Origin: Ophelia neglecta
Taxonomy: Eukaryota
Direction: 5' to 3'
Assembly: GCA_965285935.1 (NCBI GenBank)
Contig: OZ260663.1
Location: 87,048,001-87,112,000 of the forward strand
Length of the DNA stretch: 64,000 nt
Shown: piece after piece, positions 31,890-38,718 of the stretch
Layout of the letters: each line of letters starts with the position of its first letter
Numbering within the stretch: the first letter of the stretch is position 1
Made by a program: the position numbers and the translations under genes
The notes under the pieces: model-generated
The model's input: only the letters and a program-made list of their open reading frames with translations
What the model was told of the DNA's origin: nothing
Database searches by the model: none

Positions 31890-32052
31890 CAGGTCCGGTA
31901 TTAACCGCCGATTGAAGGGTACTGTTTTGATCCAAGGATGGCACTAAGATTCAAGTGAACGCCTTCCAACGAAGTGCTATACTTCGATCGAAGTATGATA
32001 CTTCGATTAAAGTATATGCACATGCGCACTGGTCATTTCCGCCGTCTGCTAA
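31890..32052 (+). repeat. Left terminal inverted repeat (163 bp)
   Basis: Reverse complement of 38556-38718 with one mismatch (GCACTAAG vs GCACTTAG). Confidence 0.97.
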
Positions 32053-32559
32053 ACATGGGTGCTGATGTTGCCACAAAAGCACAATCTCGTTGAATTCGGT
32101 AAAAATATGGTATGGACATTTGATATTATCTGATGAAAAACACAGAAATTGAAGTATTACTTATAGAGACATCATATTAGGGGCCTAGTGTGCCGTATTT
32201 CAACACAGCTTTCACTGGTAATATTCATCTGTTGGGAGCCTGTATTTACATATGATTACATGGCTTCTTTGCTGTAGGGTGACCAATAATTAATATTGAT
32301 TATTGTATATTCCGACTGGAATAATAATACATACTTTACTTTATTGTGTAGAAAAAGTACTATTCTTTTTACCTTGCAAAGGAATTTGGTGGACATAGCC
32401 TGGAAAAAAAAAAAATACACTGGAAAAGTGCCCAATTTTGCAACGTTTAAATTGTGTTTTTCCCAACAATCAGACACAGACCTCTGTTTGCTGGTTTGCT
32501 GACTTTATTCTGCTTTACCAATTAATACTAAATACTTGTTTTCAGTATCTGGGTTGATC

Positions 32560-35500
32560 ATGGAGGGCCATAATCAGGTTTTAAAAAGCACATGTAGGGT
32601 GTGCGGAAGGAAAAGGGACATTTCGAGTTTGAGGACAGTCACTTCCGCATCTTCATTAATTAAAAAAGTCTATAGTCATGACATTAGCACAGATGTTAGT
32701 GGAATACATCCAAGCCTGTGTTGTCTCTCATGCCTCAATATTTTAAGAAGATGTGTCAAATTCAAACAGAAAAAAGGTGGGCCAAGACCAAGTAAAAAAA
32801 TTCCTGGCTTGCAGGATTTTCAACCACATGGGGAAGGATGCAGTTTGTGTGAACCTCATGGCCCTTATGAACCATCACAGGAGGTATGGCCTAAGTGTAA
32901 AATTTAGTGATAATAAATTTACATATGTTAATTATATGTTGATTATAATGTTTATATATTCAATACATATAAATGTATTTATGTTTATATAAACATACTT
33001 TGGTCACTGTTATTGCAGGCACAATGTGAAATGTCTGACGAAATATCAGATTATGATACTTCCACAGAGGAAGATGACCCACAAACAAAGAAAAAACAGA
33101 GGATGGCATATATTGATGCTGCCACGCAAACCGAAATGGGTTATGAGCAGAAAACTTTACTCCAAACCCACCGGCGTTTTAGTCACAATGAAACTCAAAC
33201 TCAAAGTACTGTGCTGGTGCTTGACCTGGCCAACCTGGATGAAACTTGTTTTAATGACTTGTCTCCAGAATTCCGCTTCAAATTGTCACATGCCCTGGGA
33301 AAATCCCAGAATCAAAACATAAAAACTGATAGTATGAATCTTTCGTCAGGCAAAGATCTTGATTCACTCATAAACCTGGATTTGTACAAATTTCTAAGGC
33401 ACTGCAACATTGTGGTGGTTGGATTTCTCCTGGGCATTTCTAATAAAAATGTTGAGTTTTATAACACAAGAGTTCAATATGATGAAACAACACTTTATAC
33501 TCTATGTAAAAGTGTTGAAAGTGTCTTGAATTTGTCTGCATACAGGTGTATAATGCCCCTGCACTTCAGGGAGAGTTTGTTAATATATTCCATAACTGGC
33601 AGTCGTTTGGCCCTGTCTGTTCTAGCCTCAGGCTCATCACATGGTGGTTATTTAAGTGTTAGAAAATTTTTGTCTGACCTTGCTGAAAACAGCTCTGAAG
33701 AGACACTCCCAGGTAATATCATGTATGTCTTTGACAATAACCAGATACTTCACAGGTCGTGGAATGTGAATTTGGAAAAGAAATTTATGTGCCACATCGT
33801 GACAATGGTGGCACAGTTTGCTCTCGACAAAGACGGGACTTGGCAGTGGAAAGAAGACATGAGACCTGGGATATGGATGCTCAAAGAAACACCAAATACA
33901 AAAACTGTGAGAAAGTTAGATCAAGAACGAGAAGTTAGAAAGTTGCATTATGATGAACATCTCTATCCCTTCCTACGGGCAATGATCACAGAAGTAGCTA
34001 CAGAGCAACAGGAAACTGAATATAATAAAGAATCAGACTCCTCTGTGTTTATGGATGATGTAGATAGGTGCATAGAAAAGAAGAAAAAGGAACAGAACTT
34101 CAAAAGTTGTCATGCATGCGGAGCTCAGGAAATCCCCAAAGCAAAAATAAAATGTCCTTTGTGTAAGCAAAACCTGAAACAGGCAGAACTGAAAGCCCAA
34201 GGGTTAACAGCTCAAGGTACATGGGAAGAGAAAAAAACAACTAAACAGTCCCGAAAGGCAAAAAAGTACAGAATTTCCTTCTACGAAGAACAACCTGATA
34301 CCTTTAAGGTGGAAGTAAAAGAAATGGTGTCCCCAAGTGAGAGTATTCAAGACATCAATGAGTATAGAGTTGGGGAGCCTGTATTTGTAAATCCATGTTC
34401 ATATGAAGCATGCACTGTAGTGATGCGGAAAATTGGTCACAAGGCTGGAGTGAAAGTGTATGGGGGAGAACGTGAAGTAGTCTGTATATGTTGCGATGGA
34501 TCTCCATACGTTTTGTGTTCAAGGTTAATACTGTCAACATTCTTGTGTACAAATTGTAGAGAAAGTTGTGATGGCATTGGCGACAGTGATGAACACAAGA
34601 AAGCACATATTGGAAAGGGGGAACAGTGCCAAATGGTAAGGGAATTTGACTGGGTTCTACTTATTCCAGGACCAGGGCATCTTGAAATGAACATGGTCAG
34701 AGCATTTGTTGAGCTGACATGGGAAATATTTTGGCGACCCCTTGCTCACCTTATGAACTTCAAGAGTGACACAGCTTTGAGGGCGGCAAAACGAGTATCA
34801 GATCATCACAAGGGATGGCAGTTTTGCATTATAGCAAGGGAAGCACTGGTGAAGGAACTAGTTTTGCCATGGGTCAGGCAACAACTGCAAAACTCCAAGC
34901 CTGATTTATCTCCTGATACCTTCTTGAAGTTTGTTATGGGTGATGTAAGAGACCACACATATGTGATGATAGCAGACCTGGTTTTTGAAATTTTGGATGC
35001 AATTTTTATGTATCGTGAAGGAATTCGTGACGAAATGCCAGAGGTGGCATATGCAGCTAGGGCGAAGATTGCAAAACTGTGGAGTGGCAGGTCTCACCCA
35101 AGCTACAGGGAAATTGAGATGACAGACAGCATCATGCTTTCTAGGATGCCTGTTGAGCTCAGAGAAAGAACCCTGAAATGTTGGTCTGTGAACACTTCAG
35201 GGAGAAAAGGAACTAGTGAAGGAGGTGATTTCAAACTAGAACAAATAAACAAACAGACTCAGGCTTGGCTTCCAAAAGTGCCAAGTGGGCAAGATTGGAA
35301 AACAGTTTGCCTAAACTACAATTCACTTTCTGGGCTGAGAGAAAAAACTTTAAGTCAGTTAGGCATAAAAGATCCCAAAGCCTTTGAGTCGCACAAGCAA
35401 AAGACAATGGGAAACGAAATTAAGGCTTTTCGTGCCCTAATAAAGGAAAAGGAGTATCTATCTCATCCAGAGGTCAAAAGAGAAGTGGTTTCCTTAGAGG

Positions 35501-36535: not shown

Positions 36536-37519
36536 CTAATCATCATAACAATCTTGACAAATAAACCCATCGTCTTGGCCCATCCCACCGCAAGACCTGT
36601 GACATGTATTGCCACATTGTTTCAGGCAGTATGTCCAGTCATTTATGTGGCAATCGTTGTAGGACCCAAAACATATCACGCAACATAGAAGGGAACCCGC
36701 AGTAATGTTCTGTATCAGCTCCTGTGCTTCACCTTCGACCATCACACCCTCCGCCTGTGTAGTATCTTCGGTCTCTTGGGTTGCATGATGTTCAGGTTGA
36801 TGACTAGGACCAGCCTCTGCATCGTCAGCACTCGGCTGTTTTCTCTTCTCCTTTAAGTCATCTAGAACCTTGCGCAGGCGACTGCGAGTGGACTGATCAC
36901 TTTTACGCCCCTCATTTTTGGGGTCCAGCCTTTTTTTGCTTTGGCTAGCTTTTGGCCTCTTTGGTGAGCCATTCTCAGTGTTTTGGGTTTTTTTTGCAGA
37001 CTCTTTTCCTACAGGGGTTTTGGTTTTCACAAAATTTAAGTCCCCTTGGAATTTTTTGCTTGGTGTCGGATAAACTGGGTCCACTGACACTTCCACAACA
37101 ATGTCGGTAATTTCCCTATCTGTGTCTTCTTCTTCTGCCACTGGAACATCTGGGCTGGTGACAGTATGCTTTATCACCAGCCTCTGCCCCCCCTTGTACT
37201 GGATGGATGACAAATTTTGCTCCTGCAGCTCCCCCCCCCCACTTCAGTGAACCCTATTCTTTGTGTTGCCTCTCCAAATGAGACATGTAAACCCTTGTCT
37301 ATTAAACTATCAAAGTCTTCGTCCTTACTGCAGTACACATAGGTGTCACCATTTGGTTGTCGGAGCAAAATAGAAACCGATCCACCTGTGGTGGATATGA
37401 GTTCATGACCTTTCCGAAATAAGGTTCCTCTGCGAGTGGCCCTGGTCTTATTGCGCTTAACTGGGTCCTGTATGAATGATGAAGAGTGTGGCCCACTGTG
37501 GTGTTTCCACTTCTCATAC
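36536..37519 (-). CDS. Transposon accessory protein: SRF-type MADS-box domain, low-complexity linker and C-terminal PHD finger (one frameshift at a G10 tract; 5' exon(s) uncertain)
   Basis: Acceptor ttacag|G at 37519. MADS-like FIQDPVKRNKTRATRRGTLFRKGHELISTTGGSVSILLRQPNGDTYVY. The frame changes at C10 (37231-37240) into ORF 36536-37213, which ends CVIC...DWTYCLKQCGNTCHRSC...FICQDC (C4HC3). Confidence 0.78.
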
Positions 37520-38555
37520 CTGTAATTAATAAATGCATAATCTGTCAGAGACACCTAGATGTAGTAAGAAAATGTACTACATGTACTTAGCAACTGCGAA
37601 GAGTCCAATTCAACATTAAAACATATTGGTTCTTTGCCAGATGTGTTCTCTAATTACGTGTATTGTTTTATTAAATGCACAAAGAATAAAACTACACTCA
37701 TATTTAATATGGTATAATTTGATAAATTTGATAATTGCTGGTAATTATCATGCCACATTATATATGGTAGTACAGTTAAAAATGCTCACCTTGCATTCTC
37801 TTCTCTTGACTAACTGTCAGTAGGGTGGACTCTTAGCCTAGTCCTTGACTAATGCCTTAATATACATGGTGCATAAACTAGGTACTTAATTATGTAAGTT
37901 GCTGAATCGATCACATAAGAAACATGCATTAAATGATTGGCACAGGTATCCGATTGTAATCTCATTTAGGCCTACTATAATTCAGAACTGAAACTTTAAA
38001 CATTATGTTAGCTGAGCTCGCCTTTGAGGGCCTTCTTTTTCCATTTCACCTTGCTTTCCTTGGCCCTTGGCTATTGGACAGAGTATTACTGAAAATTGGA
38101 GCCTACAGTATGTTAATCAATTCGCAAAGTTCTTCAGAACAGTTCCCAGCATGTTTATTCTAGGCTGAACAGGCCAAATTTGATGCCAAGATACACATAT
38201 TAATAAGCAATGTCCACAAATAAGACCTATATAGAATTGCAGAGCAGTTTTCAAAGTACAAGGCACATATAATATTTTGAAAAATGGGTTGTCGGAATGT
38301 GCTTCAAAAGGTAATTAATCTCGCCTACCCAACAGAGTCTAACAGTGTCTAATGTACTATGGGATATTGCTTCTATATACTCTGATACTAACATGAAAAT
38401 ACTTCAGACAGCTAAGTGACATGTGCATAAATAGGTCAAATTAGTTTCCTTATACATGAAACTTACGGATAACCATGAAAACATAATAAGAATAATATTG
38501 AATCAACCTTAAAAATGAATTATTTTAGCGTTTCCACAGATCCGACATCAATTGA

Positions 38556-38718
38556 TTAGCAGACGGCGGAAATGACCAGTGCGCATGTGCATATACTTTA
38601 ATCGAAGTATCATACTTCGATCGAAGTATAGCACTTCGTTGGAAGGCGTTCACTTGAATCTAAGTGCCATCCTTGGATCAAAACAGTACCCTTCAATCGG
38701 CGGTTAATACCGGACCTG
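38556..38718 (-). repeat. Right terminal inverted repeat (163 bp)
   Basis: Mirror of 31890-32052. Confidence 0.97.

What the first reader, a model, noticed from the sequence alone, without database searches (positions are those of the whole stretch)
31890..38718. Young two-gene DNA transposon with ProtoRAG-like layout but non-RAG parts: candidate undescribed family
Seen: 163-bp TIRs with one mismatch, a TATAT direct flank on both sides, an intact spliced 1,089-aa ORF and a convergent gene ending in a PHD finger. Known: ProtoRAG has TIRs, 5-bp TSDs and tail-to-tail RAG1L/RAG2L genes. Academ elements use a DN / D / GxxH / E-type core and carry XPG or RecQ helicase (with or without PHD) modules. 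Chapaev elements carry the RAG1-like N-terminal zinc domain. This element mixes those traits: a RAG1-type N-terminus, an Academ/DUF6589-like core with no XPG or helicase, CAG rather than CAC termini, and a MADS+PHD partner instead of a kelch RAG2. Inference: a recently active, possibly unclassified lineage that reached a 'transposase plus chromatin-reader partner' design in parallel with RAG.
Basis: partly seen in the sequence, partly recalled or inferred. Interest (0 to 1): 0.92.

Follow-up and report, generated by a model that had tools for sequence, protein, structure and literature searches.

The report
Young two-gene DNA transposon family
This is a real, very recently mobile cut-and-paste DNA transposon whose transposase carries the RAG1-type N-terminal zinc domain on a non-RAG catalytic core. 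It travels with a conserved second gene for a MADS-like, PHD-like protein, and this layout fits no transposon family description I could check.

Summary
Window 31890-38718 is a 6,829-bp element with 166-nt inverted ends (one mismatch in the first 163) and a TATAT duplication on both sides.

The genome has five copies, 98.9-99.8% identical: two full length and three internal-deletion derivatives. Four have perfect 5-bp target duplications.

Gene 1 is a two-exon, 1,089-codon transposase. It has a RAG1 NZD/"Chapa" zinc domain and a DDE core distantly related to Pfam DUF6589. No sequence similarity to RAG1/Transib was found.

Gene 2 is convergent. It encodes a MADS (SRF-type)-like N-terminus and a C4HC3 PHD-like C-terminus. 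Its 338-codon frame is open in two other copies but frameshifted here (G10 run versus G8).

The pairing is not a one-off capture. The same convergent pair occurs at seven or more diverged loci in this genome, in four other assemblies and in Branchiostoma belcheri. One relative has 2.1-kb perfect inverted ends, the same CAGGTCC tip and a 5-bp duplication.

The element fails the published Chapaev hallmarks (3-4 bp duplication, CAC tips) and lacks Academ modules and a RAG-like core. Without Repbase or Dfam I cannot rule out a prior description. The Academ link and the partner's function remain untested.

The parts
31885..31889 (.). left target-site duplication TATAT
   Evidence: 5-bp duplications also flank three other copies and the relative in L015
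31890..32055 (+). left terminal inverted repeat, tip CAGGTCCGG
   Evidence: 166 nt, 99%; mismatches only at positions 57 and 164
31906..32019 (+). six tandem 19-bp subterminal repeats inside the left inverted repeat (core about GATnnnAAGT); mirrored at 38589-38702
   Evidence: family D1, spacing 19. The L015 relative shows a similar repeat pattern and a shared GCATGCGCA motif, by eye only
32560..32883 (+). transposase exon 1: RAG1 NZD / Chapa-type zinc domain (108 codons, phase 0)
   Evidence: Pfam RAG1_imp_bd 41.6 bits, E 1.4e-10; PDB 21wb RAG1 NZD E 6e-6; aligns to the N-terminus of intronless P0002
32884..33018 (+). predicted intron (GT...CAG)
   Evidence: sequence; no RNA evidence available
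33019..35964 (+). transposase exon 2: DDE RNase-H-fold core with zinc ribbon, C2H2 finger and helical insertion domain (981 codons plus stop)
   Evidence: AlphaFold2 model pLDDT 82.7; P element transposase Z 10.2, Hermes Z 8.1-8.2, RAG1 Z 6.3
33733..33738 (+). invariant Asp-Asn (D240-N241 of exon-2 numbering), predicted first catalytic Asp
   Evidence: invariant in 32 relatives; lies on strand 234-245 of the model; offset to integrase D64; coordinates
34495..34497 (+). invariant D494, predicted second catalytic Asp (CDGxPY motif)
34546..34608 (+). conserved C-x2-C-x12-H-x3-H finger, 17 residues after D494
   Evidence: (strand-strand-helix)
34669..34686 (+). conserved GxxH-x-E motif (GPGHLE) right after the last core strand
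35227..35250 (+). invariant D738 / E742 / N745; E742 is the predicted third catalytic residue
   Evidence: offsets of the alignments to P element E531, Hermes E572, integrase E152 and RAG1 E962 all fall at about 738-742 (inference from range ends)
36536..37554 (-). partner gene, main exon (338 codons when open); 5' exon and start codon not resolved
   Evidence: 33% identical over its full length to the partner in L015, E 7e-52
37333..37476 (-). MADS (SRF-type)-like domain of the partner
   Evidence: Pfam SRF-TF 25.4 bits here (cut-off 26), 27.5 and 27.8 bits in two relatives; family profile hits SRF, SEP3 and MCM1 at E about 1e-4
37231..37240 (-). G10 run (C10 on + strand) where the partner frame shifts in this copy; G8 in copies C7 and C1
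36548..36685 (-). C-terminal C4HC3 PHD-like zinc finger of the partner
   Evidence: Cys/His spacing; no Pfam hit for this copy; hhalign 92% to the finger of the L018 partner, which scores Pfam PHD 20.3 bits, E 5.8e-4
38553..38718 (-). right terminal inverted repeat
38719..38723 (.). right target-site duplication TATAT

Best explanation
An autonomous, very young cut-and-paste DNA transposon. Its family couples two convergent genes inside long inverted ends.

Gene 1 is a 1,089-codon DDE transposase. It has an N-terminal RAG1-NZD/Chapa zinc domain. Its RNase-H-fold core has the predicted triad D240/D494/E742 (exon-2 numbering). The core also carries a zinc ribbon, a C2H2 finger just after the second Asp, and a helical insertion domain that opens with a GxxH motif.

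Gene 2 encodes a protein of about 340 residues with a MADS-like DNA-binding head and a PHD-like zinc finger tail.

Shown: mobility with 5-bp staggered integration, deletion derivatives, the domain content, and conservation of the gene pair across diverged relatives.

Inferred: the transposase recognises the CAGGTCC tips and cuts and joins. The partner is a required or regulatory accessory factor. It may bind the six 19-bp subterminal repeats through its MADS-like head and may use the PHD-like finger to contact chromatin or the transposase. This role would resemble TnpA in En/Spm, the Myb-like protein of PIF/Harbinger, or RAG2L in ProtoRAG.

The window copy itself probably depends on partner protein supplied by the C7 or C1 copy, if its G10 frameshift is real.
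For: Ends, duplication and copies. Both frames are open in the C7 copy.

Domains.

Conserved catalytic-type residues in 32 relatives. Confident model (pLDDT 82.7, pTM 0.77). Best solved neighbours are all DDE transposases or integrases: P element Z 10.2 over 354 residues, Hermes Z 8.1-8.2, ISCth4 Z 7.7, retroviral integrases Z 8-9, RAG1 Z 6.3.

Family size: 1,384 cluster representatives at E<=1e-3.

Conserved convergent pair:
- L015, with transposase 54% and partner 33% identical. Both genes lie inside 2,117-nt perfect inverted ends with tip CAGGTCC and duplication TTGAA.
- The P0004 and P0006 loci.
- L018.
- Branchiostoma belcheri L017.
- At least seven more diverged pairs in this genome.
Against: - No RNA data exist. 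Splicing, expression and the partner's start codon are therefore unproven.
- No transposition assay and no empty site were examined.
- The partner ORF is frameshifted in this copy.
- The partner's structure model failed (pLDDT 34).
- The PHD call is below Pfam thresholds. The MADS call is just under threshold for this copy.
- Loci of P0007 and P0010 show no recognisable partner among the called genes.
- The choice of E742 over E557 rests on alignment range offsets, not on inspected superpositions.
Confidence: 0.8

Rival explanations
1. It is simply a member of the already described Chapaev group (CMC clade). The two-gene layout and the 5-bp duplication are then unreported or little-noticed traits of some Chapaev families in Repbase.
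For: - The Chapa/NZD domain is said to occur only in RAG1/RAG1L and Chapaev among transposons (PMC4411706; bioRxiv 10.64898/2026.01.24.700457).
- 8 of 32 relatives hit RAG1_imp_bd.
- The amphioxus relative P0011 shares the PPxxCHRCRC stretch with Chapaev-1_BF and Chapaev-2_BF in the published alignment.
- Conserved C-x2-C and H-x3-H lie between the second Asp and E742, as in the CMC/Transib clade signature. CA..TG tips and 2-5 bp duplications fit that clade (PMC12730594).
Against: - The published Chapaev hallmarks are a 3-4 bp duplication and invariable CAC...GTG tips (PMC4079192). Chapaev3 elements are about 1.8-1.9 kb with TWA duplications (PMC3014272). Here the duplication is 5 bp and the tips are CAG...CTG in three diverged relatives.
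- No sequence similarity to a RAG1/Transib-type core was found.
- The nearest solved fold is the P element transposase, not RAG1.
- The C2H2 spacing is that of an ordinary zinc finger.
Confidence: 0.3
2. It is a helicase-less, XPG-less branch of the Academ superfamily. DUF6589 would then be the Academ transposase core.
For: - There is a weak but real link to DUF6589.
- One 31%-identical relative (P0010) lies 7 kb from a RecQ-type helicase gene.
Against: - No Academ reference sequence or paper could be consulted.
- The element has no XPG or helicase ORF.
- The large DUF6589 ORFs of this genome show neither domain.
- The 5-bp duplication differs from the 3-4 or 9-10 bp that I recall for Academ lineages. 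This is from memory and was not checked.
Confidence: 0.15
3. The second gene is a captured host gene or a passenger with no role in transposition.
For: It is broken in the window copy. It is also absent from the two shortest copies, which nevertheless carry target duplications.
Against: - The same gene sits in the same convergent position next to transposases that are only 29-63% identical, in at least six assemblies.
- The partner diverges in step with the transposase (33-37% against 54-56%).
- It lies inside the inverted ends in L015.
- Deletion derivatives are expected to be mobilised in trans.
Confidence: 0.04

Closest known systems
ProtoRAG / RAG-like (RAGL) transposons
   Same: Inverted ends, 5-bp target duplication, two tail-to-tail genes, an NZD/Chapa-type zinc domain at the transposase N-terminus, and a partner ending in a PHD-type finger (as vertebrate RAG2 does).
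   Different: - The core shows no sequence similarity to RAG1/Transib. Its structural match to RAG1 (Z 6.3) is weaker than to the P element transposase (Z 10.2).
- Tips are CAG rather than CAC, with no heptamer/nonamer layout.
- The partner has a MADS-like head instead of a kelch propeller.
Chapaev / Chapaev3 (CMC clade)
   Same: Chapa zinc domain on a DDE transposase; animal hosts including lancelet and molluscs; CA..TG tips; Cys and His motifs after the second Asp.
   Different: 5-bp rather than 3-4 bp duplication; CAG rather than the 'invariable' CAC tip; a much larger element with a conserved second gene, which I found reported nowhere in the held literature.
En/Spm (CACTA) TnpD plus TnpA, and PIF/Harbinger transposase plus Myb-like protein (from general knowledge)
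   Same: Two-protein DNA transposons. A separate DNA-binding protein recognises subterminal repeats and assists the transposase. Here, arrays of 19-bp subterminal repeats are present.
   Different: Unrelated proteins; the partner here is MADS-like plus PHD-like; its function has not been tested.
Drosophila P element transposase (PDB 6p5a, 6pe2)
   Same: Best structural neighbour of the predicted core (Z 10.2, 354-361 aligned residues): an RNase H fold interrupted by a large insertion domain.
   Different: 9-11% identity, no THAP domain, 5-bp rather than 8-bp duplication. The Z score is modest, so this shows a shared architecture and not membership.
Academ (AcademX / AcademH)
   Same: Large animal DDE transposases. 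A PHD finger occurs in one AcademH sublineage (recalled, not checked). There is a possible link through DUF6589.
   Different: No XPG nuclease or helicase; different duplication length (recalled); the relationship is untested.

Membership tests
Chapaev (CMC) | N-terminal Chapa (RAG1 NZD-like) zinc domain | tested here: met
   Pfam RAG1_imp_bd E 1.4e-10; PDB 21wb E 6e-6; 8 of 32 relatives hit
Chapaev (CMC) | 3- to 4-bp target-site duplication (PMC4079192) | tested here: not met
   5 bp in four of five copies and in the L015 relative; one copy has a 4-bp match
Chapaev (CMC) | invariable 5'-CAC...GTG-3' termini (PMC4079192) | tested here: not met
   CAGGTCC...GGACCTG here and in L015; CAGTCGG in amphioxus L017
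Chapaev (CMC) | [quoted passage not shown] | tested here: inconclusive
   C511-x2-C514-x12-H527-x3-H531 is conserved, but it has ordinary C2H2 spacing and lies about 210 residues before E742
Chapaev (CMC) | core groups with reference Chapaev transposases | not testable with these tools
   No Repbase, Dfam or RepeatPeps library. Only N-terminal alignments are in the held supplement
Transib / RAG-like | 5-bp target-site duplication | tested here: met
Transib / RAG-like | RAG1/Transib-type catalytic core | tested here: not met
   No PF12940 hit. The family profile finds no RAG1 chain in the PDB at E<=10. hhalign against a RAG1-like ORF of the same genome gives prob 0.2%. Structural Z is only 6.3
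Transib / RAG-like | convergent RAG2-like kelch partner | tested here: not met
   The orientation is convergent, but the partner is MADS-like plus PHD-like with no kelch hit
Academ | XPG nuclease or helicase module in the element | tested here: not met
   Only two coding regions. No such ORF or Pfam hit was found
Academ | core groups with reference Academ transposases | not testable with these tools
   No reference library; the AcademH paper is not held
Pfam DUF6589 (PF20231) | score at or above the gathering cut-off | tested here: met
   27.5 bits against a cut-off of 27, covering only profile positions 324-379. 17 of 32 relatives hit. hhalign prob 91.6%, E 8e-7, over 313 columns to a full-length DUF6589 ORF
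MADS box (SRF-TF, PF00319), partner protein | score at or above the gathering cut-off, and similarity to solved MADS domains | tested here: inconclusive
   25.4 and 23.6 bits for this family's own copies (cut-off 26); 27.5 and 27.8 bits for two relatives. The family profile's top PDB hits are SRF, SEP3 and MCM1 at E 1.3-1.7e-4, then MEF2
PHD finger (PF00628), partner protein | C4HC3 pattern and a Pfam match | tested here: inconclusive
   C4HC3 spacing is present. No Pfam hit for this copy or for L015. The L018 relative scores 20.3 bits, E 5.8e-4 (cut-off 24), and aligns to this finger at hhalign 92%. Precomputed PHD hits exist on the partners next to P0004 and P0006

The most novel reading that the evidence does not exclude
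This could be a superfamily-level lineage of animal DNA transposons that has not been described as such. It would combine a Chapa/NZD zinc domain, a DUF6589-type non-RAG core, CAG tips and a 5-bp duplication. Its mobility would depend on a dedicated MADS-plus-PHD cofactor. That would make it a second, independent 'transposase plus PHD-bearing partner' system beside RAG1-RAG2, and a possible alternative source of the RAG1 N-terminal zinc domain.
Probability: 0.3. Interest if true: 0.8.

Novelty: new variant of a known kind. Interest (0 to 1): 0.62.

Why it matters
The origin of the RAG1 N-terminal zinc domain is an open question. Recent structural work names Chapaev as the only transposon lineage that keeps such a domain.

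This element shows the domain on a large, widespread family: 1,384 cluster representatives, from a probable mollusc to amphioxus. Its core is not detectably RAG- or Transib-like. Even so, it makes 5-bp duplications and travels with a convergent partner that ends in a PHD-type finger.

Copies with both frames open exist: C7 in this genome, and L015 with perfect 2.1-kb ends. The need for the partner, its DNA targets and any chromatin reading can therefore be tested directly.

A MADS-type domain in a transposon accessory protein would also be unusual. I found no report of one in the held literature.

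Tried and rejected
- Partner homologue searches found nothing: the word-indexed protein search and the ESM Atlas.
- The AlphaFold2 model of the partner from a 4-sequence alignment was unusable (pLDDT 34).
- Foldseek on the whole transposase model gave nothing significant. VIA-align was needed.
- A PDB sequence search with the family profile found only zinc-ribbon noise.
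- A second word-indexed search with the 32-sequence alignment added no new proteins.
- No RNA runs hold the element. Expression, splicing and the partner's 5' exon stay open.
- Comparing the regions upstream of three partner genes found no conserved peptide.
- I tested whether DUF6589 equals Academ by looking for XPG or helicase domains in this genome's 1,700-2,400-codon DUF6589 ORFs. None were found.
- The AcademH and Yuan-Wessler papers are not held.
- No inverted ends were found within 9.9 kb around the C12 relative.
- The amphioxus element shows no matching target duplication. Its left end is duplicated.
- I first read E557 as the third catalytic residue, because that gives CMC-like spacing. 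I dropped this in favour of E742, because the structural alignments to P element, Hermes, integrase and RAG1 all end consistently with E742.
- Complex prediction was not run. The partner model is too poor and the contact domains are unknown.
- Each exon was searched by reference.
- Read laying was given 2,501 letters.

Full report
**Observation**

The stretch 31890-38718 is bounded by inverted arms of 166 nt at 99% complementarity. TATAT flanks both ends (31885-31889 and 38719-38723). Each arm contains six tandem 19-bp units with a core near GATnnnAAGT.

**Copies and mobility**

A search of the whole 762-Mb assembly with the left arm found ten hits that pair into five elements:
- the window copy, 6,829 bp;
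- a second full-length copy on C7, 99.65% identical (L011);
- three internal-deletion derivatives of 4,797 bp (C1), 2,486 bp (C8) and 2,592 bp (C2), 98.9-99.8% identical.

In window coordinates these derivatives lack about 33394-35416, 33244-37591 and 33830-38068.

The flanks are different at each site. They form perfect 5-bp direct repeats in four copies (TATAT, AACTA, ATAAA, TGTAA) and a 4-bp match in the fifth. This is the signature of recent cut-and-paste insertions with a 5-bp stagger.

Collapsed short-read contigs from one sample cover the element at about 4-6 times the depth of the unique flank. That is roughly in line with five copies, although contig depth is a poor measure of copy number.

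**Transposase gene**

Exon 1 (32560-32883, 108 codons) ends at a GT. Exon 2 starts at 33019 after a CAG and runs to the stop at 35962-35964. Together they give 1,089 codons. No RNA run holds the element.

The splice is supported by P0002, an intronless 1,125-residue homologue. It aligns to exon 1 at its residues 1-94 and to exon 2 from residue 213. All searches were run exon by exon.

Exon 1 matches Pfam RAG1_imp_bd (41.6 bits, E 1.4e-10). It also matches the solved mouse RAG1 N-terminal zinc domain 21wb (E 6e-6).

Exon 2 reaches Pfam DUF6589 only marginally (27.5 bits against a cut-off of 27, profile positions 324-379).

**The transposase family**

An exhaustive phmmer search found 1,384 cluster representatives at E<=1e-3 and 205 at E<=1e-30. 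The named hits are from Branchiostoma. The nearest ESM Atlas clusters are mostly molluscan, so the host is probably a mollusc. This is weak evidence.

In an alignment of 32 full-length relatives (A1), the invariant or near-invariant residues are:
- D240-N241;
- a zinc ribbon, C365/C368/C380/C383;
- D494, in CDGxPY;
- C511-x2-C514-x12-H527-x3-H531;
- G552-x-x-H555-x-E557;
- D738/E742/N745 (coordinates).

Of the 32 relatives, 17 hit DUF6589 and 8 hit RAG1_imp_bd. No RAG1-core, XPG or helicase family appears.

**Fold**

AlphaFold2 on A1 gave a confident model (pLDDT 82.7, pTM 0.77). Foldseek found nothing significant. VIA-align ranked the following:

| Solved structure | Z | Aligned residues |
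|---|---|---|
| P element transposase | 10.2 | 354-361 |
| Retroviral integrases | 8-9 | about 114-137 |
| Hermes | 8.1-8.2 | about 270-300 |
| ISCth4 | 7.7 | about 250 |
| RAG1 | 6.3 | 354 |

The range offsets of these alignments place the first Asp at D240. They place the catalytic Glu of P element (E531), Hermes (E572), integrase (E152) and RAG1 (E962) at about residue 738-742.

I therefore predict the triad D240/D494/E742. The helical region 553-735 would be an insertion domain that opens with the GxxH motif. This is an inference from range ends, not from inspected superpositions.

**Relation to RAG1/Transib and to DUF6589**

The A1 profile finds no RAG1 or Transib chain in the PDB, even at E<=10. 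hhalign against a RAG1-like ORF of the same genome gives probability 0.2%.

In contrast, hhalign against a 2,427-codon DUF6589 ORF of this genome gives 91.6% (E 8e-7). The alignment covers 313 columns, from the GxxH motif to past E742.

So the core is a distant DUF6589 relative and is not detectably RAG-like. I could not show that DUF6589 is the Academ core. No reference library or AcademH paper was available. The giant DUF6589 ORFs carry no XPG or helicase domain.

**Partner gene**

On the minus strand, two overlapping frames (37174-37554 and 36536-37213) together encode one protein. Copies C7 and C1 have a single open frame of 338 codons.

The window copy has G10 at 37231-37240 where those copies have G8. 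The collapsed read contigs also show the 2-base-shorter form. So this copy's partner is frameshifted, or the run is an assembly error.

The frame has no ATG near its start, and a good acceptor precedes it. A short 5' exon is therefore likely, but I could not find it.

The N-terminal part scores Pfam SRF-TF at 25.4 and 23.6 bits for this family's own copies (cut-off 26). It scores 27.5 and 27.8 bits in two relatives. A 4-sequence profile has SRF, SEPALLATA3 and MCM1 as its best PDB matches (E 1.3-1.7e-4), followed by MEF2 proteins.

The C-terminus has C4HC3 spacing but gets no Pfam hit. It aligns at 92% probability to the finger of a related partner in L018. That finger scores Pfam PHD at 20.3 bits, E 5.8e-4. 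The structure model of the partner failed (pLDDT 34).

**Is the pairing conserved?**

Yes. The evidence from other assemblies:
- **L015** (ENA assembly ERZ25069853). A 54%-identical transposase is followed by a convergent 355-codon gene. That gene is 33% identical to the partner over its full length (E 7e-52). Both genes lie inside 2,117-nt, 100% identical inverted ends with tip CAGGTCC and a TTGAA duplication.
- **P0004 and P0006.** Convergent genes with PHD or SRF-TF hits follow these transposases (39-40% identical).
- **P0009 / L018** (40% identical).
- **Branchiostoma belcheri P0011** (29% identical, with its own RAG1_imp_bd hit; tip CAGTCGG).

Within this genome, at least seven further diverged pairs keep the same tail-to-tail order with gaps of 336-576 bp. 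Transposase identity is 39-63% and partner identity is 32-47%. They lie on C12 (three pairs), C9, C1 and C133, with a more distant one on C9.

Two loci (P0007, P0010) show no recognisable partner among the called genes.

**Comparison with known families**

Published Chapaev hallmarks are a 3-4 bp duplication and invariable CAC...GTG tips (PMC4079192). Chapaev3 elements are about 1.8-1.9 kb with TWA duplications (PMC3014272). This element meets neither hallmark, although it carries the Chapa domain. That domain is said to be confined to RAG1/RAG1L and Chapaev (PMC4411706; bioRxiv 10.64898/2026.01.24.700457).

The wider CMC/Transib clade is described as having CA..TG tips, 2-5 bp duplications, and C(2)C and H(3-4)H motifs (PMC12730594). 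This element is compatible with that description. However, its Cys/His motif has ordinary C2H2 spacing.

The amphioxus relative shares a PPxxCHRCRC stretch with Chapaev-1_BF and Chapaev-2_BF in the published N-terminal alignment. A Chapaev affinity therefore stays a live rival.

I found no paper linking Chapaev, or any DNA transposon, with a MADS or PHD partner gene in the held library.

**Verdict**

The element belongs to a large, old family whose two-gene design is conserved and which is still mobile in at least two species.

Its exact place among DDE superfamilies is unresolved: an atypical Chapaev relative, an Academ relative, or a lineage of its own. So is the partner's role.

Noticed in passing
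window 38725-39136: A 412-bp MITE-like unit with perfect 36-nt inverted ends that finish in G13/C13 tracts. It directly abuts the transposon's right target duplication. Read-contig depth there is 10^3-10^4, against 10-17 in the unique flank, so it belongs to a very abundant repeat family.
   Followed up: partly
G000:C5:102602487-102609768 (L053, L055); also C7:23878608, C12:46166796, C142: Giant open frames of about 1,600-2,400 codons. Their only Pfam hit is a near-full-length DUF6589; no XPG or helicase domain was found. They are distantly homologous to the transposase studied here. Possibly another uncharacterised transposase family.
   Followed up: partly
G000:C8:1035740-1037647, C8:1113310-1114764, C12:73602421-73604253, C1:15622061-15623659: RAG1-core (PF12940) matches of up to 265 bits. 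The same genome therefore also holds RAG1-like or Transib-like elements, some with open frames.
   Followed up: no
G000:C1:19254634-19257235 (L030): An old, stop-ridden relative pair (partner on +, transposase on -) lies immediately beside the young C1 copy of the element.
   Followed up: no
L015:5320-18651: The related 13.3-kb element in another assembly has 2,117-nt perfect inverted ends containing internal tandem repeats of about 211 bp. Both frames are open, so it may be active.
   Followed up: partly
G000:C12:72729935-72730894 (L023): An open 333-codon partner homologue (37% identical, SRF-TF 27.8 bits) with no transposase match reported nearby. It could be a solo or domesticated copy.
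   Followed up: no
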